Below are positions 9,482 to 46,658 of a stretch of DNA of 64,000 bases, in pieces. The stretch is from Mizuhopecten yessoensis. Its lineage: Eukaryota. Made by a program: the position numbers and the translations under genes. Every line of letters starts with the position of its first letter. Position 1 is the first letter of the stretch. The notes under the pieces were generated by a model. It saw only the letters and a program-made list of their open reading frames with translations, was not told the DNA's origin and did no database searches. The stretch is taken from positions 1 to 64,000 of the forward strand of contig NW_018406060.1 of the NCBI RefSeq assembly GCF_002113885.1. Direction: 5' to 3'.

Positions 9482-10404
9482 GTAGAATGAGTTTTGAGTC
9501 CTATAAACAACTTGAGTCATTTAAGGACGTACCGTCTTGTGTGTAATTTATATGTGCGTGTTGGTGGGTGCGTGTTTAATATTTGTCTCGCTGTAATTAC
9601 GCTTATAACCTTCTTCGCTTGGGTAAACAAACTACACCAAGGCCAAAAGCAAGGTATAACAAAAAGAAACATTAGAAAATGAAAAACAAATAATTACAAA
9701 AGAAATAACAAATCCGGAATGTTGCAATAGAAAATATATTTCATATTTGTCGGATTTCATTCCCAAGATTAAGGGCTCAAACATCCAATTATGCAGGAGG
9801 CACAGAAGTCATGTGATGTATTAGAAGGTGGCAGACAAAATAATTACAGACGCAAGGTACATTTGAATAAATACACATGGATAGGAACACGTTTTTGCCG
9901 TAATTCATCTATTAAACAATTGTTATGTTTCCATTATTAGCATGCTCCGTTTTTCCCTATGATGATATCCTCGTGATATTTCTTGTATAATTTTGTATTT
10001 GAAGGTGGCCAAAGGATATTATAAACATAAATGATCATGAATTGTTTAACCATTTATGTTTTTTTTGTATTTTGTAGCTTGTAAACAGCTTGATATTTTT
10101 CAATGATAATACGTAGTTTTATCATTACTTAACTGTGGGAAAGTTGATGCGGGTAGCTGCACTGTCTTAAATGGAAGTAATTCTACTAACGCGCATCTAC
10201 TTTTTACCAGTTATTTCTAGACGGTAAGTCGAGAACTATGCATGTCCAGTGTCAATGTCGTATTAAACTACCAAAGTTCCTTTGAAAGTAAAAAAATCAG
10301 TGTAAACAGTTGGGAGCAAACTTGACTTGTTATATAGTGCATTATGTAGTGCACACGTGGTGAACAAGGTAGTGTACTAGACAAGACATTGTAATGCGCT
10401 CCCG

Positions 10405-10702
10405 TGCGCTACAGTGTTAACTCTAGTGCACTACGGTGTAAACTCCAGCGCACAACAGTGTTAACTCAAGTGAACTACGGTGTTAACTCCAGCGCACTAC
10501 GGTGTTAACTCCATCGCACTACGGTGTTAACTCAAGTGTACTACGGTGTTAACTCAAGTGCACTATGGTGTTAACTCCATCGCACAAAGGTGTTAACTCA
10601 AGTGTGCTACGGTGTTAAATCCAGTGCACTACTGTGATAACTCAATCTATGGTGTTAACTCCAGTGCACAACTGTGATAACTCAAGTGTACTACGGTGTT
10701 TA
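10405..10702. repeat. Minisatellite, ~22-bp unit (actacggtgttaactc[a/c]agtgc), ~13 copies
   Basis: Directly visible tandem array. Confidence 0.9.
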
Positions 10703-11155
10703 CGCTAGTTTAATAGACTGAAGTACAAATTTAGGTCATTGTTTGGGAAATAAAGGCAAAATGTATTATATGATAATTGAATGAGCAGAGATAAAATATC
10801 AATTGACTATCGCATAATTTTTCTGATTTTTCAAAATTTCATTTTGATATGTTTAAACAGGATAAATTGTATTCTATTATAGGTGATTGTAAAACACTAA
10901 TAGTCATTTGTTTAATTTCAAACGAAAGCAGTTTTATACTGAAGTATGTGTTAATTATGTGAGATTGTTAATCCAAAGTTGTCTGCCTTTAGGAAACCTT
11001 AACAGAGATAGGTCTTACATGTACCTGGTAAGGACAAATAATAGTAAAAGTAATCATGATAATAGTGCATTGTCCCCTTTCTCTTCTCCCCATCCCCAAT
11101 ACCTTACATATCCTTCTAGTTTTGCCTTGGCCCTAGCCAGGAGGCTATGTGGCTC

Positions 11156-17893: not shown

Positions 17894-18734
17894 ATAAGAC
17901 CATATTTGCGTTTACGTGTAGTACATAGGTTAAACTTTACCAAGTCATGTGACACATACAACAAATGTCGCATCAAACAATAAGTTTCTATATATTGGTA
18001 AGAATGAGTAAACGTTTCCAGCAAATACTGTCTTTAATGATGGGATGATTAACATAATAATTACCCAACGACGTCAATCAAAAATGGTTTTGTAAATATA
18101 TTTATGAAAAGAAAAATAACAACAATCTATGACCTTACCTTTTCAGTATTGAGATATATAAGTATATACATATATTCGTAATAATAATACCAATTATTTA
18201 ACTCCTTAATATCCACAATGCTATATATATCCAAACTTGCGTATATATTCTATCTAAGGAAATATCAATCTATCGGATAAATCAATTATAATCACTTGGT
18301 ATCAATTAAGTCCAACTTTATTTTCTTCGAATTCGAACTGTTACTAAGAATTATTCAAAACATGTTATCAATATTGTTTTATATCTCATATACTCGAAAG
18401 GCAATTGAACCGTGGATCAGAGTATGTCGTTCGTTGACGTTTCATTTAAACAACCTTTTTTCTTTTCCGAAAAGGCATAGGGTCAGCATATGTCACTGGT
18501 AGCTCCCCTGGATAAGCGAGGTTTGTGAAAAAATGACTTCGACCCAGAATGACCAACTAGCCTCGGATTATTACATTTGGCCAGTAGTCATCGTTGGATG
18601 AAGAACTACAACGGTAGCTATATTGAATGATCTTGTTGTGTTGAAATAATTAAACCAGTAATTTTGAGCAACCAATAACTAAAGCCACTTACAGGTAATA
18701 CTATTCGTACGTAGCTTAAGTAAGCCCGTTTAAG

Positions 18735-19069
18735 AATAATAATAATAATACTTCGAGGTTCTTATATATTGCTTTATCACAACCTAGTTCGTAGGTTGTC
18801 TCAAAGCGGTTCACAAATTATGATCCGTGGTTATAGGGCTTTTGCAACAAGACAATATCTTTCTCAACTCCCTGGGATGCATACCGCCGGAGCTGCCATT
18901 TCGGCGCTAACAGCTAGCATTCAACAATTCTAGCGCTGCCCAACAACGGACTCATATACAGCTGAGTAGATTGGAGCAAGCGGAGTAAAGTATCTTGCTC
19001 AAAGGTACAACGCAGTGCCGTGCCGTTTGGTCACGAGCCCGGCGTCCTACCACTAGCCTCCGTGCCTCC
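18735..19069 (-). mobile_element. tRNA-derived SINE with L2-like tail (copies at 27991-28326 and 28643-28956)
   Basis: Minus-strand head ggaggcacggaggctagtggtaggacgcc (A-box-like; B-box appears deleted), conserved-domain-like ttgagcaagatacttta...tcagctgtata, (tat)n tail; empty site at ~36840. Confidence 0.75.
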
Positions 19070-20579
19070 TAAATATTTGACATTTGGCCACTTTTGAGGT
19101 TACAAGTATGATATTAATATCAGGTGAGCGGTGAGGTCGCATTGGGACTCTTTATTCAATATTCATAACTGTGATGTCAATACAACAGAATTAATTATGC
19201 TATACTGATTTTTATTTTGTTTAAATGTTATTGTTTTAGAAAAAAGCCCACATCTTTTAAATCTGTTCAAATTGAAATTGATCAAATATAGATAGTTTAA
19301 TATACAATTTTATACTACAAATCAAAATTTTAAGCATTTTTAAATATTTTAAAAGTTCTATAATGTCTATATTTCCCCTTTCTTATATGAAACCAGTATA
19401 ATATTCAGTCACGTAGTCGAAAATCATCGCTACTGGCACGAATAACATTATTTTAAAGCGAATCTTGTATTACTGAATATAGATTTGTTACATTCATAAA
19501 AAACAAGCCATTTATTTGAAGCAATTTACGCTTTACTTTAAGGAGACAGATGAAAGGAAAATGACCAAGCCAGATAACGACAATAATTCCATGTAAATAG
19601 ATTATTTTTTGAATGATAAAATTAATAATAAATACTCAGACATTAATGTTTTTAAAGTAATTCCTTGCAGTTGATTAAAGTTTATTTCCACCGCCGTTAC
19701 AGAGTAGCACTTAGAAAGATTAACAGTAATGTAACTAAGGTGACGGAACCCGTCTGTATCAACACACACGCGTCTATGACAACGGCCGTAGCAACGCGAA
19801 AAAACCAACCGTCTTTTATGAGAAATCATGCCTTGTACAACTATACCATAATTAGTAAGGTGATTTAAAAGTAGTAATTAATAACTGTCATACAGGTCAA
19901 GTGTCAACANTTCATTTCACCGCTTCATGAAATCGACCATTTCAATAAAGAATTATGATATTTGAATTTATTGTTAATTTGTGTAAGTCATGATACACAA
20001 ACCATGGTTTAAGATAGATTTAGAGTCTCTAAATGAATGTCTAGATTAATATTGTACTAGCAAACCGATAATGCCATATCAATTTCAGACTTGACATTGG
20101 GGAAGATTTAGATTCAAAATTTAAAAGAATAATCTTAAACTGAAATGAGTATCAAATAATTCAAAGACATTATTTAAATGTGAAAAGTCAAAAAAATAAT
20201 AAGTGTAAATAAAAACTTAATGCGGGTGAAATATGAACAAAGAATATGATACAGACGTAGACTTTGAATTTTGTTTGATTTTGTCGATTTGTTAGACATT
20301 TTGAGATGATGTGTTCCGGAAAGATTATCGTTTTCTAGATCTGCTTTGTCGTTGAAACTTGACTTGTATGACATGTATTAATTAATAGTTTTAAATATTC
20401 TTACTAATTATAGTATATTCGTTTAGGTAACAAAGCCAATTGAAGATACACATCTTTTCTATTGGATATTTTAGTTACTTTAGCGCTAGCGATACTCACT
20501 TTGGCAGGACAACAGTCAATACTGAAGAGGGGGTGACCATTAAAACTTTCCTACTGAAATAACGAGTAAGACCCCGTTA

Positions 20580-21265
20580 CCCCGTTGCTGCTTGAATTCT
20601 GCGATGCATAGATTTGATAAGATACTTTATTTATGTCATAGGGATGTTCTGCCACTCTTCCAGAAGGGCATGGAGCAGTGCGGTTAGAATCTCTGGTGGA
20701 TTGTGGCGCGTTCGAATGCGTCGATCCAACATGTCCACACGTGTTCTATTGGCATGAGGTCGCGACTGTATTTTGACCAAGGTAACGTGTCGACATTGTT
20801 TGGCGAAAATAGTCCATTGCACGTAAAACGTCACATGGCACCGAGAGGTTTTAGAATAACGTCAATTTACAGTTGAGCTGCCAATTGCCTTCAATGACGA
20901 CTAAGGTTTTTTTCTGTTGCATAAAAAACACGTTTGGACGGTATCGCATGAGCCATTGGAGACTGACGTCACGTAGAAGACGCGTTTCAGGGGCATCCCC
21001 ACTGCAACGCGACGCGACTTAATGCCGTAGAGACGGGTCAGCACAGTATCTCGGCTTATTCTAGGTATATCGTGTATCGGAACCACGTGCTAATCGGGCT
21101 ATGTATTGAAGTCTCGCGGACACAAGAACGCGTAGTGTGACATATTCAATTACCGTGTATTAATGGTGAATATGTATGATACCATACTGTTCAACACAGC
21201 TAACATTAATATTATAGATTATGGACATTTAAGGGGGTTGTGTATCCTTTGCGTGTCAGTGTATA
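20580..21265 (-). mobile_element. Highly degenerate Tc1/mariner transposon remnant
   Basis: Translated fragments DMLDRRIRTRHNPP..L..ALLEEWQNIP and ISRDTVLTRL resemble Tc1 transposase; Tc1-like end ...tttgcgtgtcagtg|ta at ~21247-21263. Confidence 0.65.
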
Positions 21266-21529
21266 AATCCATATATGACTCTATATAAGAAAGCTATCAG
21301 CCTAATATGATGACAATTTCGGATCTTCAGAAGAGGTCGTATGACGCTTGTAACACATTTGACCCCTGGCAAAGCTCACTTGACAATCGGGAAGGTGAGC
21401 TTATAAACAATTTCAAGCGAGGACATAAGTGGAATTCTACTTTGTGATAGATGAAATATATGAAAATGTGTTCAGTTGATGTAAAATAACTATAATAAAT
21501 TCATATTACCAATTGGTATTGATTATGCA

Positions 21530-21910
21530 CTACATAATCTGACATGTAATAGATGGGTGTGAATTATACATTACTCAATCCAACATGTGACAAAAAGGTG
21601 TAGATTGTACACCACACAATCTGACATGAAACAAATGGTTGTGGATTATACATTACAAAATATATCCTATATCAAATGGATTATACACTAAAAATCTGTC
21701 AAATAGCAAGTGGACGTGAATTAAACATTAAACAATCCGATATGTGACAAATAGGTATGGACTATACATAATACAATCAGACATTTAACGGATGGGTATG
21801 GATTATGCATTACAGAATCTGTCATTTCACAAATCAGTTTTTATAATACACTACAAAATCTGTTATATAACAAATGGGGATGGAGTATACACTACACAAT
21901 CCGACATAGT
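21530..21910. repeat. Degenerate ~41-bp tandem repeat, ~9 copies
   Basis: Recurring cacaatctgacatg...aaatgggtgtggattatacatta. Confidence 0.75.
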
Positions 21911-22063
21911 AAGCTATCCTTGAACTTTCCATTCTCGACTGTTTCAATTCTATACAAACAATGTTATCATTGTTTCGTTTCGTTCACAAGTTTTACGTTT
22001 TATTACATACATGTAGCCTGGTAATGCTTGGCGTTTGTACTACATAAACAAAGAGAGTTGTAT

Positions 22064-23532
22064 TTAAACATTGTGTACTGTAGTCATTTTACTGTTTGAT
22101 ACGACAAACCGCCCACAGAACTCCCTCCGTGTCTACACATATAGTCCAAGGCCTGTTTTTGTCAGTATGTGGCAGTCGCAGGTATTGGTCATCACCATTC
22201 AAGAGATGGAGGCAGCAGTTAGCAAAGTCAGAAATCACCAGGAATCCTAGACTGTCATACTTTACATCCCAGGATCGATGTTTCCATAACTAAATAATTC
22301 CTGAAGCTTTCTGTCCAGCACTATAACTTCTCTGTTTTCTTTTCCACCATTACCTGTCCGATCTTCATCAACTACGGCGATATTGTTGTTGAGGGGACAC
22401 TGTGCTTTTCTTAATGGTGAACACACCATCGGTTTCCAGAAAAAATATGTTTTGGTGGCGATAACGGGCTTCCCTTTCAGAGTGTATTCGGCGATTCTGT
22501 GTTTTGTTCCCACAAGTATATGTTCATCTCTTGTAACACAGAGACATCGGGGTACATCCTTTGTTTTGAATCTGCGGGTCAGTTCACCTGATATCAGCTC
22601 CATGACACTGTTATCCGACGTAGAACATACCCAGAGGTTGTGTGTAGTAGGGGAAAAACTGATATCTTCGATGTGAACAAGACTCTTTATCTCCTGTTGT
22701 ATCTCTCCTTGACTGTTTAGGGTGGTCACTTTGAATCCGCAATCTGTCCACACGCCACCACCAATTTTGAGACACATAGCATTTATTTGACATGTAGATT
22801 CCCATTCTGATAAAATCTTTATCTGAGGAAGAAGGATTTTCTCTCGGTCTTGACCTGTGCCTGTGCTCCATTTATCTGATTGCTTATGTCGGATGAAACT
22901 TTTCCAAATGCCTCCTTCATGATCATATTCCTCCTGTTGTTTGGGATGAAGTCGGCAAAACCTAAAGTTGGTTTTTCAGGTGTGATGATGTTTGTCTGGA
23001 GTCCTTTTGAAAGGTCAAACACCTGGATATCTGTGCCCGTCTGAAGAGTTTCCTTGCAGTGGTTAAGTTGTTCTTTTAGGTCTGCGAGGTTTTCTCGAGT
23101 TCAGTCTTATAACTAGTGAGGACTCTTCTAAATGTTTCAACTGAGAAACTGTTTCCGCTATCAAAACATCAATATTCTCCTTTAGTTTTCCCCCTTGCTT
23201 TTTACCTCTTCCGCTACTCTCTCAAAATGGTTCAAGTTTTCATCCAGATTGTGCTGTGAAGAATTGATTTCCTGTTGAATTTCAATTAGCGCGTTTTGCT
23301 CCGTTTTATTTATGAATGTTTGTATCTTACGTTTGTTGTTAGGTGTAACTTCACTCAGTAAGACAATATCATGACCTTTGTGTGAAGTGGACACACATTT
23401 GGCACATATGACGTCATCACATGTCTCACAAAACCAATCCAAAGTCTCACTTTTGTGGTGTACACATGTAGTTTGATCCTAGCCGCGAACCACTATCTGT
23501 CCTTTGTAGAAAGAAATCGCATTTTCTGCCAT
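22064..23532 (-). pseudogene. TRIM-like copy 3 (inverted), multiply disrupted
   Basis: ATG at 23532 (MAENAISFYKGQ); CAG>TAG at 23479-23481; frameshifts split the protein into ORFs 23182-23442, 22819-23022, 22262-22777; deletions in linker and late blades. Confidence 0.92.
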
Positions 23533-23591
23533 TTCAGCTAGTTATTTCTAAGGCAGGACATCAACCAATTAGTTTTATCTATATATCATTA

Positions 23592-23664
23592 CAAAGTAAG
23601 TCACAAATTTTGAAGGAAATTATAAATACTGAACGTTTCACGTTTCATTGAACACTTGGTATTT
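23592..23664. repeat. Left arm of a perfect 73-bp inverted repeat (right arm 25238-25310)
   Basis: Reverse complement compared base by base: aaataccaagtgttcaatgaaacgtgaaacgttcagtatttataatttccttcaaaatttgtgacttactttg. Confidence 0.92.
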
Positions 23665-25237
23665 AATGATTTTCAGCTTACCCTATAGTAATAATACAGC
23701 TACATATTTTCTTTAAATGATATGCGTTCAGTATCAATGAACGGTTGGACAAGATGCGCATACAAAATGTTATATTGTATTAAGCTGTTAGTAATAACAT
23801 CGCATTTGTAAATAAGTGAAAATCTTTGCCTGTTCGTTTCCCTCAAGTGCAATATAATGGAGGTAATTTCACTAGTAAGCTTACAAATTAAATATCATAT
23901 TATATGATGACCAAATTGCAGCAGTAACTGTGCTATCTGCTTTATCTGTGTACTTGCCCAGATGTGTTTTGGACTTGTATACCACCCAGTCACAATATAT
24001 GGCCAATATACGTAAGTTATAGCAATGTTGTTATCAATAGAATATAATTCTGTTAAGGTGAGAATTGAATATATCTCACACATCAATAATACATTATGAA
24101 CATGAACACCGCCAACAATAAATTACAAACAAACCTTTATTGATGTAGTTTCCCCCTTTCTACTAGTTAAAGCTTTCACATGCTTACAGGTAAAGAGACA
24201 TAGTTACTTTGTATCTACCTGAACTTGCCATTGCCTTGTCCCTATCTTTGTACCCTAGTTTGACATAGCATGCTATCTTTTATTTGTGACACATGCTGGA
24301 TCTGCCTGGTCAGTAACCTCATTCAACAGTATATGAGAGGTCCTTTATATCTTCTACGATTAAAAAAGTGTTGTTGTTTTTTTGGGTCAATATTTCAGTT
24401 CAGATAGAAATAAAAGAAAACGGGTTTTAAAACAGACATACTAATGCGAACTGGAAAATAATATCAGTGTCCTCTATTTTATGAACAACACTCGCCTTGT
24501 AGAAAAGCAACATTAACAAAAACAAAAAGGATATTGACAAGAATTCACATGTATCATACATGAGCGTGAGAGACCTATTTGAAAAAGACTTAAAAGCTTA
24601 ATGAGTCAAGATACTTTGAGAATCTATAAAACATATATTAGACCATTTTTAAATAGGCTTGTGAACTATGGGATGAATGTGCAAGACACGAGGCTGTAAA
24701 GACAGAGAAACGACAAAGAAATGCTACGCTTATTTTAGCAAAAGTTTCTTTGTAAGCTCGTATCCTTGATTTGCATGTTGTAAAATGTCCGAAATCTTGC
24801 CTTTTGTAAGCCAGGTAGATATTGTGTGTTATCTTTAACTGTGACCCATGCTGGAAACGAAAGGTCCCTTTCAGTTTAAAAGTTCATGTGTTTACAGGTA
24901 GACATTCCTAGTTATCTTGGTATCTTCCGGACCTTGTCTTCGCCGTGGTCGAGTCTGTTGAATTCTAGGTTGATATTGTGTGTTATCTTTACTTGTTTAA
25001 GATGCATGTAATTCATACCTAGACTGCTACTTGCGGCTACTCTTCCTATGTGATGTAAATCATTTCTTCATAATTGATGACATATGATACTGCAAAGACA
25101 TTGTGATTTGAATAATGTGGGTTACAGCAAATGAAATTCACAATTTTTCCAACCTACATTTACTTAAGAGTTTCGAATATGTCAAGCACACTACATTACA
25201 GCACCAAAAAATTACGATATCTGTCTTATGCAGTGTA
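23665..25237 (-). promoter_or_regulatory. Inverted copy of the gene-1 upstream region (~3335-5415), carrying module B and an internally deleted module A
   Basis: Reverse-complement matches, e.g. 24330-24360 vs 4738-4770, 24660-24860 vs 4170-4375, 25185-25232 vs 3330-3375. Confidence 0.85.
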
Positions 25238-25563
25238 AAATACCAAGTGTTCAATGAAACGTGAAACGTTCAGTATTTATAATTTCCTTCAAAATTTGTG
25301 ACTTACTTTGCAATTTTGTTACAGAATCCATGCTGATAACTCACAGTAAGCTGATCATCACAGAAGGGATTATAGACTAAAGATGATCCCTGTATCAAGA
25401 AAGGTCAGTAACATTCACTTGCCGGGATGTGAGGCCCCCGTCATTTGTGTATTACGAGAGGTCAGTAACATTCACTAGGTGGGGTTTCCCCCATCGCCTG
25501 TCTGTTAGCATATATAGATAATACTAATTGGTTGATGTCCTGCCTAAGAAATAACTAGCTGAA

Positions 25564-27171
25564 ATGGCAGAAAAGGCGATTTCTTTCTATAAAGGACAGA
25601 TAGCGGTTCGCGGCCAGGATCAAACCAAATGTGTACACCACAAAGGCGAGTCTTTGGATTGGTTTTGTGAGACATGTTATGACGTCATATGTGCCAAATG
25701 TGTGTCCACTTCACACAAAGGTCATGACAATATCCTACTTAGCGAAGCTACTCCCGACAACAAACGTAAGATAAAATCATTTATATATGAAACGGAGCAA
25801 AAAGAGCTGGTTGAAATTCAACTAAAAATCAGTTCAACACAGCATAGTCTGGATGAACACTTGAACCATTTCAAGAGTGTAGCAGAAGAAGTAAAAATGC
25901 AAGGGGAGAAACTTAAGGAGGATATTGATGTTTTGATAGCGGAAACACTAGCTCAGGTGAAACATTTAGAAGTAGAAAATACTAAACTGCTCACCAGTTA
26001 CAAGAATGAACTCGAGAAAAAACTAGCAGACCTAAAGGAACAACTGAAACATTGTAAGGAAACTCTTCAGACAGGCACAGATATCCAGGTGTTTGACCTT
26101 TCAAAAGGACTTCAGACAAACATCATCTTACCTGAAAAACCAAAGTTAGGTTCTGGCGACTTCACCCCAAACAACAGAAGGAATACAATCCTGAAGGAGG
26201 CATTTGGAAAACTTTCCCTGAGACCATCGGAACAGTCTCAGTCCTCCACTGGCCCTGACCAGTCAGATGAAACACCAGTTGATGATAACCCGCTACCTTC
26301 CGGACATCAACAATCAGTTAAACGGAGCACAGACACAGATAAAGACCCGGAGAAGGCCCTTCTTCCTCAGATTAAGATTATATCAGAATGGTCTCCAGAT
26401 ATGATTACCAAAATATGTCCAAAACATGGTGGCGGCGTGTGGACAAGTGACGGGTACAAAGGGATCCACCTAAACAGTCAAGGAGAGATACAGCAGGAGA
26501 TAAAGAGTCCTGTCTACATCTCATATATCACTTTATCCCCTACTACACACAACCTCTGGGCATGTTCTACTTCAGATAAGAGTGTCTTGGAGCTGACATC
26601 AGGTAAACTGACCCGCAGATTCAAAACAAAGGATAAACCCCGATGTCTGTGTATTACAAGAGATGAACATATTCTTGTGGGAACAAAACATAAAATTACC
26701 GAATACACTCCGGAAGGGAATCCCGGTATCGGCACCAAAACATATTTGTTGAAGAAACCGATGGTGTGTTCACCACAGAGTATATCACAATGTCCAATCA
26801 ATGACAATGTCGCTGTCGTTGATAGCGATCTTACAGATGATGGTGGTCAGGACAATCCAGCAGTCATAGTGTTAGACAGAAAACTTAAGGAGATATACAG
26901 GTATAAAGAATCACAACATTACAGCGGATCTACGTCTCTACTTTTCCCCTATGATGTAACATACGACAGTCTAGGATTCCTGGTAATAGCTGACTTCGCC
27001 AACAGAGGCATACATCTGCTGAGTGGTGATGGACAATATCTGCGACAGTTATATACTGATATAGACCTACCCTTTGTTGTATGTGTTGACACGGAGGGAG
27101 TTCTGTGGGCGGTGTTTGGTTTATCCAACACTAATCAAAAGGTTAAACGTCTACAGTACACAAGTGTTTAA
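25564..27171 (+). CDS. RING-less TRIM-like protein (B-box2, coiled coil, NHL-like propeller), copy 4, 535 aa
   Basis: Intact ORF, same domain motifs, closely similar to copy 1; putative acceptors ttttgttacag (25324) and ctgcctaag (~25548). Confidence 0.9.
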   Translation: MAEKAISFYKGQIAVRGQDQTKCVHHKGESLDWFCETCYDVICAKCVSTSHKGHDNILLSEATPDNKRKIKSFIYETEQKELVEIQLKISSTQHSLDEHLNHFKSVAEEVKMQGEKLKEDIDVLIAETLAQVKHLEVENTKLLTSYKNELEKKLADLKEQLKHCKETLQTGTDIQVFDLSKGLQTNIILPEKPKLGSGDFTPNNRRNTILKEAFGKLSLRPSEQSQSSTGPDQSDETPVDDNPLPSGHQQSVKRSTDTDKDPEKALLPQIKIISEWSPDMITKICPKHGGGVWTSDGYKGIHLNSQGEIQQEIKSPVYISYITLSPTTHNLWACSTSDKSVLELTSGKLTRRFKTKDKPRCLCITRDEHILVGTKHKITEYTPEGNPGIGTKTYLLKKPMVCSPQSISQCPINDNVAVVDSDLTDDGGQDNPAVIVLDRKLKEIYRYKESQHYSGSTSLLFPYDVTYDSLGFLVIADFANRGIHLLSGDGQYLRQLYTDIDLPFVVCVDTEGVLWAVFGLSNTNQKVKRLQYTSV

Positions 27172-29789
27172 ATAAAGCCATATTTGCGTTTACGTGTAGT
27201 ACATAGGTTAAACTTTACCAAGTCATGTGACACATACAACAAATGTCGCATCAAACAATTAGTTTCTATATATTGGTAAGAATGAGTAAACGTTTCCAGC
27301 AAATACTGTCTTTAATGAAGTGATGATTTACATTATAATTTCCCAACGACGTCAATCACAAATGGTTTTGTTAATATATTTATGAAAAGAAAAATAATAA
27401 CAATCTATGACCTTACCTTTTCAGTATTGAGATATATAAGTATGTACATATAGTCGTAATAATAATACCAATTATATCCAAACTTGCGTATATATTCTAT
27501 CTAAGGAAATCTCAATCCATTAGATAAATCAATTATAATCACTTGGTAATAATTAAGTCCAATATTGATTTTCTTCGAATTCAAACTGTTACAAAGTATT
27601 ATTCAAAACATGTTATCAATATTGTTTTATATCTCACATACTCGAAGGGCAATTGGACCTAGGTTATGCCGTGGCGCAGAGTTTGTCGTCCGTTGACGTT
27701 TCATTTAAACAATCTTTTTCTAAATACCGGAAAGGCATAGGGTCAGCATATGTCACTGGTAGTTCCCTGGGATAAGCGAAGTTTGTGAAAAATTGACTTC
27801 GACCCAGAATGACCAACTAGCCTCGGATTATGACATTTGGCCAGTAGTCATCGTTGGATGAAGAACTACACCGCTGGCTATATTGAATGATCTTGTTGTG
27901 CTGAAATAATTAAACCAGTAATTTTTAACAACCAATAATTATCGCCACTTATAGGTAATAATATTCGTACGTAGCTTAATTAAGTCCGTTTAATAATAAT
28001 AATAATTCGAGGTTCTTATATACTGCTTTAACACAACCTAGTTAGTAGGTTGTCTCAAAGCGGTTAAAAAATTATGATCCGTGGTTATAGGGCTTTTGCA
28101 ATCACAGCCAATATCTTTCTCAACTCCCTGGGGTGCATACCGTCGGAGCTGCCATTTCGGCGCTAACAGCTAGCATTCAACAATTCTAGCGCTGCCCAAC
28201 CACGGACTCATATACAGCTGAGTTGATTGGAGCAAGCGGAGTAAACTATTTTGCTCAAAGGTACAACACAGTGCCGTGCCGTTCGGTCACGAGCCCGGCG
28301 TCCTACCACTTGACTTCCGTGCCTCCTAAATATTTGACATTTGGCCACTTTTGAGGTTACAAGTATGATATTAATATCAGGTGAGCGGTGAGGTCGCATT
28401 GGGACTTTTTTTCAATATGCATAACTTTGATGTCAATACAACAGAATTAATTATGCTATACTGATTTTTATTTTGTTTAAATGCTATTGTTTTAGAAAAA
28501 AACACCTCTTTTAAATCTGTTCAAATTGAAATTGATCAAATATAGATAGTTTCATATACAATTTTATACTACAAATCAAAATTTAAAGCATTAATAAATA
28601 TTTTAAAAGTTCTATTATGTCTATATTTCCCCTTTCTTATTNGGTTCTTATATACTGCTTTAACACAACCTAGTTAGTAGGTTGTCTCAAAGCGGTTCAA
28701 AAATTATGATCCGTGGTTATAGGGCTTTTGCAACCAGCCAATATCTTTCTCAACTCCTTGGGGTGCATACCGTCGGAGCTGCCATTTCGGCGCTAACAGC
28801 TAGCATTCAACAATTCTAGCGCTGCCCAACCACGGACTCATATACAGCTGAGTTGATTGGAGCAAGCGGAGTAAACTATTTTGCTCAAAGGTACAACACA
28901 GTGCCGTGCCGTTCGGTCACGAGCCCGGCGTCCTACCACTTGACTTCCGTGCCTCCTAAATATTTGACATTTGGCCACTTTTGAGGTTACAAGTATGATA
29001 TTAATATCAGGTGAGCGGTGAGGTCGCATTGGGACTTTTTTTCAATATTCATAACTGTGATGTCAATACAACAGAATTAATTATACTGTACTGATTTTTA
29101 TTTTGTTTAAATGCTATTGTTTTAGAAAAAAACACCTCTTTTAAATCTGTTCAAATTGAAATTGATCAAATATAGATAGTTTCATATACAATTTTATACT
29201 ACAAATCAAAATTTAAAGCATTAATAAATATTTTAAAAGTTCTATTATGTCTATATTTCCCCTTTCTTATTTGATACCAGTATAATACTCCGTCACGTAG
29301 TGGAAAACCATCGCTACTGGCACGAAGAACACTATTTTAAAGCGAATCTTGTATTACTGAAGATAGATTTGTTACATTCATAGAAAACAAGCCATTTATT
29401 TGAAGCAATTTACGCTTTACTTTAAGAAGACGGATGAAAGGAAACTGACCAAGCCAGGTAACGACAATATTTCCATGTAAATAGATTATTTTTTGAATGA
29501 TAAAATTAATAATAAATACTCAGACATTAATGTTTTTAAAGTAATTTCTTGCAGTTGATTAAAGTTTATTTCCACCGCCGTTACAGAGTAGCACTTAGAA
29601 AGATTAACATTAATGTAACTAAGGTGACGGAACCCGTCTGTATCAACACACCCGCGTCTATGACAACGGCCGTAGCAACGCGAAAAACAACCGTCTTTTA
29701 TGAGACATCATGCCTTGCACAACTATACCATAATTAGTAAGATGATTTAAAAGTAGTAATTAATAACTGTCATACAGGTCAAGTGTCAA
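27043..29789 (+). repeat. Segmental duplication with 17765-19909 (3' end and 3' flank of TRIM-like gene)
   Basis: Near-identical collinear sequence including the SINE; the shorter copy ends at the N at 19910. Confidence 0.92.
28011..29271 (+). repeat. ~630-bp direct duplication split by a single N at 28642 (probable false duplication)
   Basis: 28011-28641 ~ 28643-29271; the paralogous region at ~18757-19387 is single copy. Confidence 0.9.
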
Positions 29790-31208
29790 CGATAAAGCAC
29801 AAGACACCAATATTTCCGGAACACATGGTCTTGAAGTGTCTAACAAATCTAAACAAATCAAACAACATTCTAGGTCTACGTTTGTACCATACACAAGATA
29901 CGGGTATAAACAAGTAATCTTAATTAAATCATTCTGTATTGATATGGCCGATTTCATGAAGTGGTTAAATGAGTTAAACTGAAGACAAATTCATCAGTAA
30001 CAGCTTACAGTCACAAATTCAGTCAACAAACCTAACAAACTGCTCTTGAAACTATACCATAACTTCTGGAAACGTGTTATAAACCCTTACCAGTTGTATT
30101 CAAACCTCTCGAATGCAACGCCTATAATATCTGAGTAAGTCCTTTACGACGTCTCTATCGCTATATGAAATCAATAGCCTTTAATATCTTTCCTATGCAA
30201 ATCTTCATAATATTCTGTTAATATTCTCCGTTGAAATTCGAAGTCAGAACATGAAGACTGTAACATATCATTGGGGTACGAGCTCAAGACCTGTTGAACG
30301 TGAGTCATTCACTCCTGAAATATAAGCTGTAGTTGTTTTATAAGAACTCGCTAACTGCTTGATGTTTATCCTGTTTTTTATCGTGCGGGTAGTCCTTGTC
30401 TACGTTGAAATTAGGATCGTGTAGAGCTTTATCAGGTACCGAAACTTAGTCTAGTTATAATTATTCTGTCAACTTTATTTAGTTTTGTTCTGTCAAAGTA
30501 CTTCAAGATCGGTTTGTTAGATAACCAATACAAATAACGCTTTATACATTTCACACAACACTCCTTTCTCGTTTGGGTTTCGTTTCACAATTGATATTTT
30601 ATTTTGTTGGTTCGAAAGAAGCTATAAATAAGAAATATACATATATAACTTTACACATAAACAACAAATATATCTTTCACACCATCACACATACGTTTTC
30701 CCGGTGATAAAGTTCAGTTTTTCGTCGCGCTGTGAATGATAATAAAAATACTTAACGCGACGCACTCACCAGGATGCTGTGAACAAAGGACTTCTTCCAA
30801 TGTAAGTTGAAAGTACAGTATGCAGTCGGTTGTGTGTCGGATAAGAGTCAATTTAAAACACAAGTTAAATGGTCAAGCAAGTGCTGCGATTGGTCAGTTG
30901 ACTGAATAACAACTCTCACCAATCGATTTAGTAACGAACATGCAACACACAAAACGAGTACGCCAAAATACCAACACAATCAATGACGTCACAAACATGT
31001 GTACTTTCAGGTAAAATATACACACGAACTCTTACGTGTATCTATCTATATATATATATCGAACACAAAATAAACATTGTGTTACATACATAATAGAAAG
31101 CGTAACATAGAAATGTCTGGTTTCCAAATGTGAAAGATAATTGCGTACATATCAAGGGTTTGTTGTCACAATCTGTCCCTACCTGGCAGTAGATAAGTCT
31201 TATATATA

Positions 31209-32570
31209 CTAGCGGAAAAAAGAAACTGTGCATGCCTAAAATGTGTTATAAAAATAAATGTGTATGACGTAGAACAACAAGGTTTTCAGGGACCGTTTGC
31301 CTGAATGCAAGCATGGCAACGTCGACGCATGGAGCCTATCAGACGGTTCAAGAATGCTTGTAGGATGGCATTCCAGATCTGTACCACCACTGCAGCCAAA
31401 TCAGCCAACGTCACCGGTTGATTAGGTAATGCCCGTAATCTGCGCTTCATTTCATCCCAGACGTGTTCAATGGGCGACAGATCGGGGGATACAGCAGGCC
31501 AGGGCAACACGTCAACGTTCTGCTGGGCCAGAAAGTCCATAGCAACACGAGCTGTGTGTGGCCAGGCGTTGTCCTGCTGTAGCGTAATGTGACGTTGCTG
31601 CCCTTGCACGAATGGAACGACGTGAGTCCGGAGGATCTCGTCACGGTAACGTAGCGCGTTCAAATTCCAGTTAACACCCACTAGAGGCGTTCTCCCGTTG
31701 GCTGTGATGCCGCCCCAAATCATAACATAAAAAAAGAACGTCGTTGTACCACACACGCGCCACGGAAACGTTCTCCAACGAGACGATACATTCTGGAACG
31801 GCCGTCACTACTATCAAGGTGGACTCGCGACTCGTCCGTAAACAAAATGCCTGCCAAATCCCGTCGAGTAAATCGCAGATGCCTTCTGCACCAGTCCAGA
31901 CGTGCTACACGATGACGTGGCAGAAGAACTGGGCGGATTGCAGGACGTCGCGGACGGATAGCTCGTTCACGCAATCGGTTCCGTACAGTTCTCGGGCTTA
32001 TTGGTAGCAACCCAGGGATTGTTCGTGCAGTCAAACTTGCCGTTTGGAAGCGATTTCTCAAATGGACAAGCCAAATATGGTTGTCCTGTTGACGTGACGT
32101 CACACGTGGACGTCCCGCACGAGGTCGATCGCCGACGTGGCTGTTGATGTCGTCTCCACAAATCCCGGATGTGTTTCGATGGACATGAAAACGTGTAGAG
32201 ACAACGGCTTGGCCCATACCAGCTTGAAGCATACCAATAATCCGGAGGCGGTCATTTTCATTGAGCCTCGGCATAGCATTAATCACAAATTAAAAAGTTA
32301 TAATGCTGTTTTTACTGTTCACTGGTCTCAACAGAGTGACCCAACAGTTGAAAAATAAACTTTCATTGTCGAATTGGATGGCTGGACGAGAAAAACGTGC
32401 AAACTGGTCAACGCCTATAGAGAGCAAACTGCACGGGAAAAACTGTCAATGACACACGGATAGTATGTATGTGTCATACTCGGTCATGTGTGTGAAATTT
32501 CATGTATATACAGTTGGTAATACATGTTCTATAACAATTCTCCGCATGCACAGTTTCTTTTTTCCGCTAG
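31209..32570 (-). mobile_element. Full-length Tc1-family (DD34E) DNA transposon with frameshifted transposase (~32274-31286)
   Basis: Perfect 27-bp TIRs ctagcggaaaaaagaaactgtgcatgc, TA flanks; motifs GRPR, LFTDESR, QQDNAWPH, SPDLSPIEHVW with 34 residues between D and E; frameshift at ~31725-31740. Confidence 0.95.
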
Positions 32571-33968: not shown

Positions 33969-35384
33969 ATGGCAGAAAATGCGATTTCGTTCTATAAAGG
34001 ACAGATAGCTGTTCGCGGGAAGAGTCAAACTACATGTGTATATCACAAAAGCGAAACTTTGGACTTGTTTTGTGAGACTTGTAATGACGTCATCTGTGCC
34101 AAGTGTGTGTCCACTTCACACAAAGATCATGACACTACCCTACTACGCGAAGTTACTCCAGCCAACAAACGTAAGATCAAAACATTTATAAATGAAACGG
34201 AGCAGAAGAAGCTGATTGAAATTCAACAGGAAATCAATTCTACACAGGACAGTCTGGATAAACACTTGAACGATTCTGAGAGTGTTGCAGAAGAGGTAAG
34301 CACGCAAGGAGTGACACGTAGGGCCCTCACCAGTTACAAGACTGAACTCGGGAAAACACTTGCAAACCTTAAAGAGCAACTAAAGCAATGTAAGAAAACT
34401 CTACAGACTGGCACGGATATCCAGGTGTTTGACCTGGAAAAAGAACTTCAGACCACTAACACCTGCCTTGACAAAACATATGCAGGTTCTGCCTTATTCG
34501 TCCCATACAACAGAAGAAATGAAATCCTGGGTGCTGCATTTGAAAAAGTAACCACCCCACCATCTGGACACATGAAGATTCTATCAGAATGGAACTATCA
34601 GGGTAACATAACACCCATATGTCCCAAAAGTGGCGGTAGTGTGTGGATAAATAACATCTGCAAAGTAACCCACCTTAACAGCCAAGGAACTATGGAGCAG
34701 CAGATGCACACGTTTGGCTTGGCCAGAGATATCTCTGTATCCCCCTCTACACACAATCTATGGATATGTTGTGATTATGATAAAAATATTACGGAGCTGA
34801 TACATGCATCAGGTGTACTGAACCATGTATTCAGCACAAAGGATGAACCCCGATGTCTGTGTGTTAGAAAGGATGAACATATCCTTGTGGGAACAAAACA
34901 CAAAATCACCGAGTACACTCTAGGAGGGGAGCCCGTTATCACTACCAAAACATCATTTTTCAGAAAACCAATAGTGTGTTCACCACAGAGGATATCACAA
35001 TGCCCAATCAACTACAATGTCGCTGTAGTTGATAGAGATCAGAAAGGAGATGGTGGTAAGGACAAACCTGTAGTCATTGTGTTGGACAGACAGCTTAAGC
35101 AATTATACAGGTATGGAGAATCACAACACAACAGTGGCACTGATTTGTGGAGTTTTGATCCCTATGATGTAACGTACGACAGTTTAGGACACCTGGTGAT
35201 TGCGGACTATACAAACAAACACCTCCATCTGCTGAGTGGTGATGGACAATACCTGCGACTGCTGCATACCGACATAGACAGTCCCCGGGCTGTATGTGTT
35301 GATACGGAAGGAGTTCTTTGGGCCGTTTTGGAAGCAGTCTACAATAACGGAAATGTGAAACGTCTACAGTTCACAAATGCTTAA
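33969..35384 (+). CDS. RING-less TRIM-like protein, copy 5, 471 aa, with shortened coiled coil and no S/T/P linker
   Basis: Intact ORF with B-box2 (CVYHKSETLDLFCETCNDVICAKCVSTSHKDH) and NHL-like blades; in-frame deletions relative to copies 1, 4 and 6. Confidence 0.85.
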   Translation: MAENAISFYKGQIAVRGKSQTTCVYHKSETLDLFCETCNDVICAKCVSTSHKDHDTTLLREVTPANKRKIKTFINETEQKKLIEIQQEINSTQDSLDKHLNDSESVAEEVSTQGVTRRALTSYKTELGKTLANLKEQLKQCKKTLQTGTDIQVFDLEKELQTTNTCLDKTYAGSALFVPYNRRNEILGAAFEKVTTPPSGHMKILSEWNYQGNITPICPKSGGSVWINNICKVTHLNSQGTMEQQMHTFGLARDISVSPSTHNLWICCDYDKNITELIHASGVLNHVFSTKDEPRCLCVRKDEHILVGTKHKITEYTLGGEPVITTKTSFFRKPIVCSPQRISQCPINYNVAVVDRDQKGDGGKDKPVVIVLDRQLKQLYRYGESQHNSGTDLWSFDPYDVTYDSLGHLVIADYTNKHLHLLSGDGQYLRLLHTDIDSPRAVCVDTEGVLWAVLEAVYNNGNVKRLQFTNA

Positions 35385-37207: not shown

Positions 37208-37860
37208 TTTTTGTCTCGCCGCAACGAAGTGCAATCGAGACATAGGTGTTGCTTTTCCGGCGACGGCGGCGACGGCGTCAACATTCAGTTTTTGTGTTTA
37301 AGTTAGTTTCTCTAAAAGTATAAGTGCGTGCTACACCAACCAAAATTGCACCATACATGCATCTTAGGTCGTACATCTCAACCTATGCATCAGATGCTGG
37401 ATACAGCATACTTTTCATGGATCATTGACTTTGTCAACACTCTATCAACATTAAGTTTTTGCGTTTAAGTTAGATTCTCTGAAAGTATAAGTGCGACACC
37501 AACCAAACGTGGACCGTACATATATCTTAGGCATTACATCTCAACCCATGCGTCAAATGCTAGATGCGTCATACCTTTCATGGTCCATTGACTTTGTCAG
37601 CATCTCCATCAACATTAAGTGTTTGCGTTTAAGTTAGTTTCATAAGTGCTACATCAACCAAACGTGGACCGTAGATGCATCTTAGGTAGTACATCTCAAC
37701 CCAAGCATCAACTGCTGGATGCGGCATACCTTTCATGGTCCTTTGACTTTGTCAGCATCTCGATCAACATTAGATTTTTGCGTTTAAGTTAGTTTCTCTG
37801 ATATGTGCATTGATTGTCAAAGCGGGGCATAGGCGAGACATATCAATCCGAATGGCTTGT
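37208..37860 (+). mobile_element. Second HINE-like non-autonomous element with ~160-bp internal tandem repeats
   Basis: 5' tttttgtctcgcc, (cggcga) microsatellite, units starting tcaacatt at ~37279, 37445, 37609, 37764; subterminal inverted ggcgagaca at ~37831; ends cttgt. Confidence 0.75.
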
Positions 37861-38151: not shown

Positions 38152-39358
38152 CTTCAACTTCAACTTCAATGTTTTACTCGACAAAAACCATGTATGGTCA
38201 TCACGTCAAGGGTGACTATGTACATCCGTGCAGTGTGGAGCCTTTGTGCGGTTAAAACTATATACAATCGGAAAAGTCTATTCCACCTCTCCCCTGACTG
38301 CCGCCTTGAAGGCGTCCAGGTCCTCGATGCTGGCGACGCTGGGTGGCAGGAGGTTCCATGTTGTGATGGTGCGGGGGATAAAAGAATGTCTGTATGCGTT
38401 GGTTGCCATATGCGGAGTGTAGAGTTTGTAGGGGTGGCTGTTCCTTGTTGTTGTGACGGTGGAGTAGGTAGGATGGTAGTTGGTTGGTACTGCTATGTGG
38501 TGGTGTAGAATCTTGTGCATAAATATGATGTCCGTTATCTTGCGTCTGTGTTCCAATGTATTCCATCTGAGGTCCTTTATCATCTGTGTAGTGCTGTCAG
38601 GTTTGTTGTAGTTGAGGGGCTTTTTTAGTACGAATCTTGCTGCGTTTTTCTGTATCTGTTCTATCCTGTTGATGTGTTGGGTTGTGTGTGGATTCCAGGC
38701 TGTGGTGCTGTATTCTAGTTTTGGTCTGACAAGGCTTTTGTATGCTCTCTCTTTTACTTGTTGTGGGCAGTGTCTTAAATTCCTCTTCAAAAATCCTAGT
38801 GTTCTGTTGGCTTTGCTGATGGTGTTGTCTATGTGTGTGTTGAATTTGAAGTTGCTTGCTAATTCTACTCCTAGGTATGGGTGGTGCTCTACTATTTCTA
38901 ATGTCTGTCCCTTCATCTGGTAGTTGTAGTGTTGTGTTGTATTCTTGTTGGTGGCTTGCATAATGGCATATTTATTCACGTTAAACTCCATCTGCCAGGT
39001 GTCTGCCCATTGACACAGTGTGTTGAGGTCGCGTTGTAGTTTCTCGTGGTCTTCANTATCTGTCAAAAAGTTGCCAATCCATTTCTGTGTGGTCCCCTGT
39101 ATCCCGTAGTGGTGTAGTTTTGATGAGAGTCGTTGGTGTGCGACTTTGTCGAATGCCTTGGCGAAGTCTAGAATTGCAATGTCTACTTGTGTCTTGTTGT
39201 TGTTGATGTGCTGAGTGATGTCGTCTGTGGTGAGGAATAGTTGTGATTCGCAGGAGCGTTTTCTTCGGAAGCCGTGTTGATTTTCGTGTAGTATGTTCTG
39301 TCTGTCTAGGTGGTCCATTATCTGCGAAACTATGATGTGTTCTAGCATCTTTGAGGGT
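38152..39358 (-). mobile_element. 5'-truncated CR1/L2-group LINE (reverse transcriptase 3' part), middle lost in a contig join
   Basis: NQHGFRRKRSCESQL, LDFAKAFDKV, WQMEFNVNK, YLGV, SFIPRTITTWNLLP motifs; (ttgaag)n tail; N at 39056 replaces the QG/YADD region. Confidence 0.9.
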
Positions 39359-46500: not shown

Positions 46501-46658
46501 TATCTGAACGCCAAAATGGTGTATGTGTGTGAAAGGTATAATTTTGTGATTTTTAATAATGTTATAATCTTATTCATAGGATGAATGCTGATCAATAAGG
46601 ATGAACAGTATTTCATCATGAGATAGCGGCTTTCACCAGGTGAGTGTCCCCATCACAA

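What the first reader, a model, noticed from the sequence alone, without database searches (positions are those of the whole stretch)
23592..25310. One promoter cassette between head-to-head paralogues, bounded by a perfect 73-bp inverted repeat: possible flippable promoter
Seen: the ~1.57-kb interval is an inverted copy of the gene-1 upstream region and points at the dead copy 3. Intact copy 4 has only ~325 bp of correctly oriented upstream homology and no first-exon module of its own. The arms (23592-23664, 25238-25310) are identical, and the ~53 bp before each ATG differ at only 2 positions, although the two coding regions and the gene-1 equivalent are clearly more diverged. Recombination between the arms would place the module in front of copy 4, collinear with gene 1. 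Inference: a recent or polymorphic inversion (or local gene conversion) that could switch copy 4 on/off. Mis-oriented assembly is a real alternative.
Basis: partly seen in the sequence, partly recalled or inferred. Interest (0 to 1): 0.78.

Follow-up and report, generated by a model that had tools for sequence, protein, structure and literature searches.

The report
Inverted paralogue junction, not a promoter switch
The perfect 73-bp inverted repeat is real, but it is the gene-conversion-homogenised inner edge of a head-to-head duplication of two scallop B-box/NHL genes, and the intact copy is already transcribed from a leader exon 6.7 kb upstream, so no flipping promoter is needed or seen.

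Summary
Arms 23592-23664 and 25238-25310 are a perfect 73-nt inverted repeat (77 nt with one mismatch). The 1.57-kb interval between them is an inverted copy of the gene-1 upstream region, collinear with dead copy 3.

The switch reading is not supported.
- An RNA contig joins copy 4's exon 2 (from 25325, canonical AG) to an exon ending at 18613 (canonical GT). Copy 4 is therefore expressed through a 6.7-kb intron that contains copy 3 and the interval.
- The one "opposite-strand" DNA contig and the loose ends at 25242 come from a collinear paralogue, "3P", at C1568:430.6-434.3 kb. They are not a flipped allele.
- Copy 4's non-coding 25238-25563 is 96-99% like the copy 3/3P lineage. Its coding region is closer to gene 1 and the C1568:413k gene. 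That marks a conversion or recombination tract of about 326 bp ending near the ATG.
- No recombinase gene lies nearby.

Only k=31 contigs were available, and these cannot read orientation across a 77-bp perfect repeat. A rare recombination-driven inversion polymorphism therefore stays untested. This is an ordinary structure in a fast-evolving gene cluster, assembled from short reads. The scan had noted this same stretch before (s1-507927), as a first reading only.

The parts
23588..23664 (.). Left arm of the inverted repeat (perfect over 23592-23664). It is the copy 3-side copy of the segment that lies just upstream of the family's conserved 3' splice site.
   Evidence: It is 100% identical to the same segment of paralogue 3P on C1568.
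25238..25314 (.). Right arm (perfect over 25238-25310). It lies directly upstream of copy 4's acceptor. It contains a TATA-like TATTTATAA (25273-25281) and the motif AAACGTTCAGT, which is shared by all five paralogues aligned. Position 25238 is the breakpoint where homology to the gene-1-type upstream unit begins.
   Evidence: Depth arithmetic gives no RNA coverage on 25206-25318 in X14 or X16.
23665..25237 (-). The 1.57-kb interval. It is the upstream unit of copy 3, collinear with gene-1 upstream and with 3P. Blocks: 23665-24364 (gene 1 4735-5413), 24365-24541 (no gene-1 counterpart), 24542-24861 (gene 1 4170-4500), 24862-25142 (gene 1 3371-3651), and 25143-25237, whose right-hand part (about 25186-25236) matches gene 1 3325-3375.
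25029..25205 (-). Discrete low-level RNA block seen in two RNA-like runs, with zero mismatches to the window. It is a candidate first exon of the copy 3-type unit. The right edge falls at 25201/25205 in the two runs. A candidate minus-strand donor TAG|GTATGA at 25019/25018 is conserved in 3P and in gene 1 (GTATGT). The strand is inferred, not shown.
   Evidence: records 12 and 17, depth arithmetic; alignment.
22050..23535 (-). Copy 3, a pseudogene of the B-box/coiled-coil/NHL family. It has a stop at codon 18 and later stops and frameshifts. No RNA contigs lie on it, apart from one paralogue-derived contig on 22543-22723.
25315..25502 (+). Segment present in copy 4, gene 1 and 3P but deleted in copy 3. 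It holds the conserved acceptor TTGTTACAG (AG at 25323-25324) and the first part of the 5'UTR of exon 2.
25325..27171 (+). Copy 4 exon 2: 5'UTR 25325-25563 and the whole coding region 25564-27171 (535 aa; B-box, coiled coil, NHL repeats). It is expressed. The 3'UTR runs on beyond 27400, probably to the ATTAAA at 27909.
18581..18613 (+). 3' end of the leader exon that is spliced to copy 4's exon 2. The donor G|GTAGCT sits at 18613/18614. The start of this exon is unknown. It lies about 690 nt downstream of broken gene 2 and 36 nt before an ATTAAA, so it may be part of gene 2's 3'UTR.
18614..25324 (+). Inferred 6.7-kb intron of copy 4. It contains a scaffold gap (N at 19910), a transposon remnant, copy 3 in antisense, both repeat arms and the interval.
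27841..27872 (+). Twin of the leader-exon end, downstream of copy 4, with one mismatch. Its donor GT is changed to CT, so it is not a usable donor in this assembly.

Best explanation
The feature is the junction of an inverted (head-to-head) segmental duplication inside a tandem cluster of RING-less B-box/coiled-coil/NHL genes of a scallop.

How it arose (inferred). Copy 3 kept the family's full upstream unit, which is the 1.57-kb interval. Copy 4 was joined to it at a breakpoint at 25238 and shares with copy 3 only the last ~77 nt of intron 1, the acceptor, the 5'UTR and the gene. The perfect 73-nt arms are the inner end of a tract of about 326 bp (25238-25563) that was recently homogenised between copy 4 and the copy 3/3P lineage, by non-allelic gene conversion or recombination. 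The neighbouring coding sequence belongs to a different lineage.

How copy 4 is expressed. It does not depend on the interval. Its exon 2 is spliced to a leader exon ending at 18613, 6.7 kb upstream on the same strand (shown by one RNA contig). Copy 3, both arms and the interval then lie inside copy 4's first intron, if splicing is in cis (inferred). The promoter that feeds the leader exon is not known. It may be gene 2's own promoter, by read-through (inferred).

What the interval does. It still appears to fire weakly towards dead copy 3, seen as an RNA block at 25029-25205 (strand inferred). A proximal start inside the right arm is possible but weakly supported.
For: -: the 77-nt arm is embedded in about 1.6 kb of 75-89% inverted homology.
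- the interval plus copy 3 are collinear with gene 1, and copy 4's homology starts at 25238.
- copy 4 vs copy 3/3P is 98.7% (arm), 96.9%, 92.6% and 98.1% up to the ATG, then 78-92% in the CDS. Copy 4's CDS vs gene 1 and the C1568:413k gene is 86-98%. Copy 3's arm equals 3P's arm, 77/77.
- P(perfect run of 73 or more) is 0.0008-0.0075 at 83-87% identity.
- X16 record 18 (809 nt, 0 mismatches) lies on 25324-26100 and carries 32 extra 5' letters. X14 and X16 have no coverage of copy 3 or of 23086-24352.
- those letters match only 18583-18612 (exact) and 27843-27872 (1 mismatch) in the whole 988-Mb assembly.
- the 18.6-kb site is followed by GT, and its twin by CT. AG lies at 25323-25324.
- The 32-nt length equals the k=31 distance from the single difference between the site and its twin (my reasoning).
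- the apparent flipped junction in X13 and the loose ends at 25242 in X2 and X13 match paralogue 3P. That covers 12 of 16 substitutions, the exact 30-mer continuation, and identity to copy 4 over 25315-25363.
- two further assembled versions show the same copy 3-arm-interval junction. These are the C1568 tail (99.8%) and C1568:419299-420336 (98.4%).
- no recombinase nearby, only Tc1/mariner and reverse-transcriptase remnants.
Against: - The splice rests on one contig in one run. The other RNA-like run (X14) shows a contig that stops at 25319, 6 nt inside the intron, and no junction.
- The runs are labelled RNA only by guess. I infer RNA from exon-restricted coverage and from the GT-AG junction.
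- The linkage of 18.6 kb to 25.3 kb crosses a scaffold gap (N at 19910), and the right-hand contig has a near-identical copy at the end of scaffold C1568.
- The right junction (25143-25304) is assembled only once in the genome.
- k=31 contigs cannot tell the two orientations apart, so a second orientation in some individuals is not excluded.
- Identity of the arm among copy 3, copy 4 and 3P could partly reflect constraint (branch site, promoter element) rather than conversion.
Confidence: 0.72

Rival explanations
1. Germline inversion polymorphism by non-allelic homologous recombination. Crossing-over between the arms (or the longer imperfect repeat) occasionally flips the interval in the population. 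The copy 3-type first exon then sits in front of copy 4, as in gene 1 and 3P, and copy 4's leader or promoter usage changes.
For: - The arms were evidently in recombinational contact: a homogenised tract of about 326 bp.
- The interval seems to hold a transcribed first-exon-like block.
- The flipped product would be collinear with two natural units, gene 1 and 3P.
- A precedent exists in yeast, where homogenised inverted paralogues cause recurrent re-inversion (PMC9731477).
Against: - No read or contig needs it. The only opposite-strand joint is explained by 3P.
- Three assembled versions share one orientation at the left junction.
- 77 bp of perfect identity is short for efficient crossing-over (general knowledge).
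- Copy 4 is expressed without it.
Confidence: 0.1
2. Assembly artefact. The short-read assembler mis-oriented the interval between two identical 77-bp arms, or made a chimeric join at the right arm. In the animal the interval would then be collinear with copy 4.
For: - The genome has 82,659 contigs, with single-N gaps at 19910 and 28642 flanking this contig.
- There is a near-duplicate overlap at 28011-28641 / 28643-29271.
- The locus is assembled redundantly on C1568, with N gaps over the right arm.
- The right junction is assembled only once.
Against: - Copy 3 and the interval are both of the 3P lineage (93-97% to one collinear unit), whereas copy 4's CDS is not. The assembled orientation therefore needs one rearrangement and the opposite one needs two.
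- The left junction is contiguous, without N, in three assembled versions.
- Independent DNA run X2 carries the window-type sequence up to 25238 without a mismatch.
Confidence: 0.07
3. Constraint rather than conversion. The arm is identical in copy 3, copy 4 and 3P because it is a functional element, either a core promoter with a TATA box or the branch-site and regulatory end of intron 1. The two arms would then be two divergent proximal promoters separated by the interval.
For: - AAACGTTCAGT is invariant in five paralogues, including the distant genes 2 and 5.
- A TATA-like box lies 44-52 nt before the acceptor.
- X14's contig starts at 25319 with no leader.
- RNA coverage is zero on 25206-25318, between two transcribed blocks.
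Against: - Gene 1's arm differs at 8 positions and has an 11-nt insertion. The motif and TATA were not found by a narrow exact-pattern scan (not a sensitive search) in the more distant paralogues on C4580.
- Constraint does not explain why the adjacent 5'UTR is also of the copy 3/3P lineage.
- Copy 3 is a pseudogene, so its arm should be free to drift.
Confidence: 0.15
4. Programmed or somatic flip switch, analogous to bacterial phase variation, toggling copy 4 in individual cells.
For: Only the geometry: a promoter-like module between inverted repeats, flanked by two paralogues.
Against: - No site-specific recombinase nearby.
- Copy 4 is expressed from another leader.
- No flipped junctions were seen.
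- I know of no such mechanism in animals for short repeats of this kind (general knowledge).
Confidence: 0.01

Closest known systems
Flip/flop regions bounded by homogenised inverted paralogues (Saccharomyces chromosome XIV FF region; PMC9731477)
   Same: The inverted repeat is made of paralogous genes of a fast-evolving, frequently duplicating family. The repeat is locally homogenised by gene conversion. Geometrically, crossing-over would invert the segment in between.
   Different: The yeast repeat is about 4 kb and almost identical. Here only 73-77 nt are perfect and about 326 bp are near-identical. In yeast both orientations are documented, and here only one is seen. The yeast inversion carries 15 genes, whereas here the segment is a 1.57-kb upstream region.
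Arm-to-arm gene conversion in palindromes and inverted segmental duplications (e.g. primate sex-chromosome palindromes; PMC8327919, from the abstract)
   Same: Head-to-head gene copies whose inner parts are kept more alike than expected from their age.
   Different: The arms here are short and mostly diverged (75-89%). One copy is a pseudogene. The homogenised tract is non-coding.
Bacterial invertible promoter switches (fimS/FimBE, hin/hix; from general knowledge)
   Same: A promoter-bearing segment between short inverted repeats, lying between two alternative target genes.
   Different: No recombinase is present, no second orientation is seen, and the target gene is expressed independently. 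This is a eukaryotic locus with spliced leaders.
Conjoined or read-through transcripts, and leader exons lying downstream of the preceding tandem paralogue (general knowledge)
   Same: Copy 4's leader exon lies about 690 nt past gene 2's coding remnant. It sits 36 nt before a poly(A) signal and is spliced over 6.7 kb to the next gene's acceptor.
   Different: Whether transcription starts at gene 2's promoter or at a separate one is unknown.

Membership tests
Invertible promoter switch (phase-variation type) | Segment bounded by inverted repeats that carries a promoter | tested here: inconclusive
   The repeats are confirmed. Promoter activity in the interval is only inferred, from an RNA block at 25029-25205 of unknown strand.
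Invertible promoter switch (phase-variation type) | Both orientations coexist in DNA | tested here: inconclusive
   Only k=31 contigs were served, and both orientations give the same 31-mers across a 77-bp perfect repeat. The one opposite-strand joint is explained by paralogue 3P. Three assembled versions share the left junction.
Invertible promoter switch (phase-variation type) | Dedicated site-specific recombinase encoded nearby | tested here: not met
   The long ORFs of the window that I scanned against Pfam, beyond the B-box/NHL paralogues, gave only a Tc1/mariner transposase remnant (31286-32286), a reverse-transcriptase remnant (38278-39348) and two ORFs with no family hit. A few remaining long ORFs, near the N runs, were not scanned.
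Invertible promoter switch (phase-variation type) | Expression of the flanking gene depends on orientation | tested here: not met
   Copy 4 mRNA is present in two RNA-like runs. In one it is joined to a leader exon at 18.6 kb on the same strand.
Recombination-driven flip/flop region between homogenised inverted paralogues | Inverted repeat formed by paralogous genes | tested here: met
   Copy 3 vs copy 4: about 1.6 kb of inverted homology.
Recombination-driven flip/flop region between homogenised inverted paralogues | Repeat homogenised relative to other paralogues (gene conversion) | tested here: met
   The segment-wise identity discordance ends near the ATG. The perfect run exceeds chance.
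Recombination-driven flip/flop region between homogenised inverted paralogues | Two orientations found among individuals | not testable with these tools
TRIM-NHL-like proteins (B-box / coiled coil / NHL propeller) | B-box zinc finger | tested here: met
   PF00643, E = 2.1e-08, residues 19-55 of copy 4. Matches to TRIM3, TIF1-beta and TRIM5 B-box/coiled-coil chains.
TRIM-NHL-like proteins (B-box / coiled coil / NHL propeller) | C-terminal NHL repeats | tested here: met
   Matches to TRIM71, TRIM2, TRIM3, Thin NHL regions and Pizza designs over residues about 447-531.
TRIM-NHL-like proteins (B-box / coiled coil / NHL propeller) | N-terminal RING finger | tested here: not met
No RING hit. The protein starts 18 residues before the B-box.

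The most novel reading that the evidence does not exclude
The interval is an inversion polymorphism in scallop populations, produced by recombination between the homogenised arms. It swaps copy 4 between two leaders: the distal exon at 18.6 kb and the copy 3-type first exon in the interval. An immune-type recognition gene would then get allele-specific regulation. In the assembled orientation, the same primary transcript would also carry antisense copy 3 next to sense copy 4, and so could fold into a long hairpin RNA.
Probability: 0.08. Interest if true: 0.55.

Novelty: new member of a known kind. Interest (0 to 1): 0.2.

Why it matters
As found, it matters little. It is one more inverted duplication junction with local gene conversion in a rapidly duplicating invertebrate gene family, in a fragmented short-read assembly.

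It is useful in three ways:
- It is a caution: a promoter-like module between perfect inverted repeats in a eukaryotic paralogue cluster is not evidence of a switch.
- It improves the gene model. Copy 4 has a 6.7-kb first intron that holds a pseudogene in antisense.
- It gives a concrete locus where inversion polymorphism and pseudogene-derived hairpin RNA could be tested cheaply, if long-read or small-RNA data for this scallop are examined.

Tried and rejected
1. The look-up of encoding contigs with the copy 4 protein, meant to obtain transcript or other-assembly contigs.

2. I first read the X13 'opposite strands' joint (23588 to 25315) as possible evidence of a flipped allele. I rejected that for three reasons. 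Its substitutions match paralogue 3P at 12 of 16 sites. It has a ~7-nt insertion where 3P has 8 nt. 3P is also identical to copy 4 over the 49 nt beyond the arm.

3. I first read the loose ends after 25242 in X2 and X13 as an alternative haplotype of this locus. I rejected that because the 30-mer is exactly 3P's continuation.

4. I considered microhomology at the 25238 breakpoint as a mark of replication-based template switching. Only 1-2 nt (A/AA) are shared, so nothing can be concluded.

5. I looked for the arm motif and TATA box in ten more distant paralogues on C4580, C4694 and C5031, using narrow exact-pattern scans rather than a sensitive search. They were not found, so there is no family-wide support for a promoter element.

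6. I considered an interferon-response-type reading of GAAACGTGAAACG in the arm. The spacing does not fit the consensus as I recall it. I did not pursue it.

7. A paper search for scallop TRIM-NHL expansions gave nothing specific. A second search failed on syntax.

Full report
**Setting.** The window is the first 64 kb of scaffold C2733 of a 987.6-Mb assembly in 82,659 contigs. The size and contig count fit, from my memory only, the short-read Yesso scallop assembly.

The window holds a cluster of single-coding-exon genes for RING-less B-box/coiled-coil/NHL proteins.
- Intact copies: gene 1 (ORF 5703-7304), copy 4 (25564-27171), gene 5 (33969-35384) and one at 46644-48299.
- Broken copies: gene 2 (from 16973) and copy 3 (minus strand, 23535 down to about 22050).
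- Copy 4 has a B-box (PF00643). It also has NHL repeats like TRIM71, TRIM2 and TRIM3.

**Observation.** It is correct.
- The arms are 23588-23664 and 25238-25314, 77 nt with one mismatch at 25311. The perfect run is therefore 73 nt.
- They are not an isolated repeat. They are the inner end of about 1.6 kb of inverted homology between copy 3 and copy 4, at 75-89%.
- The interval 23665-25237 is collinear, on the minus strand, with gene-1 upstream (3371-5413, 86-90%) and runs on into copy 3. Copy 4 matches the gene-1 unit only from 25238.
- Copy 3 has a stop at codon 18. It also lacks about 190 nt (copy 4's 25315-25502) that contain the acceptor TTGTTACAG, which is conserved in the other four paralogues aligned.
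- At 83-87% background identity, a perfect run of 73 or more has P of 0.0008-0.0075.

**Why the arms are identical.** I compared segments of copy 4 with eight paralogous sequences.
- From 25238 to the ATG, copy 4 is 98.7%, 96.9%, 92.6% and 98.1% identical to 3P. 3P is a collinear, apparently intact paralogue at C1568:430628-434262. Copy 4 is 98.7% and 96.3% identical to copy 3 where copy 3 has sequence.
- From the ATG on, copy 4 is only 78-92% like copy 3/3P. It is 86-98% like gene 1 and the C1568:413k gene.
- Copy 3 itself is 91-97% like 3P throughout, and its arm is 77/77 identical to 3P's.

The 5' non-coding 326 bp of copy 4 therefore has a different history from its coding region. This points to a gene-conversion or recombination tract that ends near the ATG on one side and at the duplication breakpoint (25238) on the other. 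The breakpoint shares at most 1-2 nt with either parent sequence.

**Is copy 4 without a first exon?** No. I laid four runs on 22000-27400; all four were served as k=31 contigs.
- X14 and X16 come from different studies and behave as RNA. They cover 25319/25324-27400 without mismatch.
- X16 covers nothing at all on 22000-24895, which includes copy 3. X14 covers nothing on 22724-24352; its only coverage left of that is a short low-depth contig at 22000-22105 and one paralogue-derived contig on 22543-22723.
- X16 record 18 (809 nt) carries 32 letters in front of 25324.
- Thirty of these letters occur in the whole genome only at 18583-18612 (exact) and 27843-27872 (one mismatch).
- The first site is followed by GTAGCT. 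In the twin the GT is CT. Copy 4's side has AG at 25323-25324.

This is a canonical GT-AG junction, 18613|25325. The 32-letter length is exactly what a k=31 graph gives if the twin, which differs at 18611/27871, is also in the RNA. That in turn implies that copy 4's 3'UTR reaches at least 27870. The first poly(A) signal is ATTAAA at 27909.

By homology, the leader exon lies in what would be gene 2's 3'UTR, 36 nt before ATTAAA at 18649. Copy 4 may therefore be fed by read-through from gene 2 or by a separate start near 18.5 kb. This is not resolved. Relatives of this segment lie downstream of other paralogues.

The consequence, if splicing is in cis, is that copy 3 (antisense), both arms and the interval lie inside copy 4's first intron.

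**What the interval does.** Depth arithmetic gives three results for both RNA-like runs:
- zero coverage on about 25206-25318, which includes the right arm;
- high coverage from 25319/25324 onward;
- a discrete low block at 25029-25201 (X14) and 25049-25205 (X16), identical to the window and not to 3P, which differs at 25061.

X14 also has thin coverage down to 24491.

A plus-strand exon cannot end at 25205, because no GT follows. On the minus strand, a donor TAG|GTATGA at 25019/25018 is conserved in 3P and in gene 1. I read this block as the first exon of the copy 3-type unit, still weakly transcribed towards the dead gene. The strand is inferred.

It is not copy 4's only access to transcription. 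X14's contig starts at 25319 without a leader, and a TATA-like box lies at 25273-25281. A proximal start in the right arm is possible, but the evidence is weak.

**Is there a flipped form?** Only one contig suggested it. X13 record 4 equals the reverse complement of 24004-23588 followed by 25315-25363.
- Its substitutions match 3P at 12 of 16 sites. Its insertions fall where 3P has an 8-nt insertion.
- 3P is identical to copy 4 over 25315-25363 and diverges at 25364, exactly where the contig stops.
- The loose ends after 25242 in X2 and X13 are exactly 3P's continuation. They also carry 3P's T at 25061 and its shorter A run.

These contigs therefore come from a 3P-type collinear unit.

More fundamentally, an inversion between perfect 77-bp arms leaves every 31-mer unchanged, so contigs cannot test orientation. 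What can be said:
- The left junction (copy 3 - arm - interval) is contiguous in three assembled versions. These are the window, the C1568 tail at 99.8%, and C1568:419299-420336 at 98.4%.
- The assembled orientation is the parsimonious one, because copy 3 and the interval are both of the 3P lineage.
- The right junction is assembled only once. The other version has N gaps there.

**Recombinase.** The long ORFs I scanned beyond the paralogues gave only Tc1/mariner and reverse-transcriptase remnants or no family hit.

**Comparison.** The closest known kind is a segment between homogenised inverted paralogues, as in the yeast flip/flop region (PMC9731477). There both orientations are documented and the repeats are 4 kb long. 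Here only the homogenisation is shown.

The locus fails three of four defining features of a phase-variation-type switch. No recombinase is present, and expression does not depend on orientation. A second orientation has not been demonstrated.

**Limits.**
- Only one reads call was allowed, and it returned contigs only.
- The RNA labels are guesses by the tool.
- The splice is seen in one contig.
- The scaffold has a gap (N at 19910) between the leader exon and copy 4.

**Verdict.** The repeat is real and the switch is not supported. It is an ordinary product of duplication, inversion and gene conversion in a fast-evolving cluster. Interest is low.

Noticed in passing
window 19911-25010 vs G000:C1568:468398-473184; window 23019-27612 vs C1568:419299-424138: The locus is assembled more than once. 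The end of scaffold C1568 repeats window 19911-25010 at 99.8-99.9%, and a second version at 98-99.8% lies 50 kb upstream with N gaps over the right arm. C1568:455-464 kb is syntenic with window 13-19.9 kb at only 82-90%. These could be haplotypes assembled separately or a very recent segmental duplication.
   Followed up: partly
window 28011-28641 and 28643-29271 (single N at 28642): A 98.6% identical tandem pair flanks a one-letter gap. It looks like an unmerged contig overlap or a haplotype join rather than a real duplication. Window 18757-19908 is likewise 95% identical to 28643-29790, next to the single N at 19910.
   Followed up: no
G000:C1568:430628-434443: Paralogue 3P is a collinear unit: far upstream, first-exon-like block, intron, arm, acceptor, gene. 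It is 93-97% identical to the interval plus copy 3 and is open for at least 480 codons up to an N gap. It is the likely intact counterpart of dead copy 3. Run X13 carries a mosaic between 3P-type and window-type sequence in 23665-24004 and no window-type version there.
   Followed up: partly
window 18614-25324: If copy 4 is transcribed from the 18.6-kb leader, its primary transcript holds antisense copy 3 (75-89% complementary to exon 2 over about 1.5 kb). It also holds a perfect 77-bp stem whose right arm ends 10 nt before the acceptor. This could form a long hairpin RNA. No editing-like changes were seen in the RNA contigs, but contigs drop rare variants.
   Followed up: no
window 27841-27872: The twin of the leader-exon end, downstream of copy 4, has lost its GT donor (CT). 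The corresponding leader for the next gene downstream appears disabled in this assembly.
   Followed up: partly
window 31286-32286 (-), 38278-39348 (-), 20631-20834 (-): Transposon remnants lie between the gene copies. These are Tc1/mariner transposase pieces (HTH_Tnp_Tc3_2, DDE_3), a reverse-transcriptase fragment, and a short ORF ending ...LLEEWQNIP that looks like a mariner-type C-terminus.
   Followed up: partly
window 8605-9379, 10399-10715, 37278-37801, 62483-63398: Tandem repeat arrays with units of roughly 145, 25-45, 165 and 90-250 nt, seen in the self-BLAST. Not examined.
   Followed up: no
window 24366-24541: DNA run X2 has a contig that skips 174 nt here. This is the block of the interval with no counterpart in gene 1. 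It is probably an insertion/deletion polymorphism or a paralogue difference.
   Followed up: no
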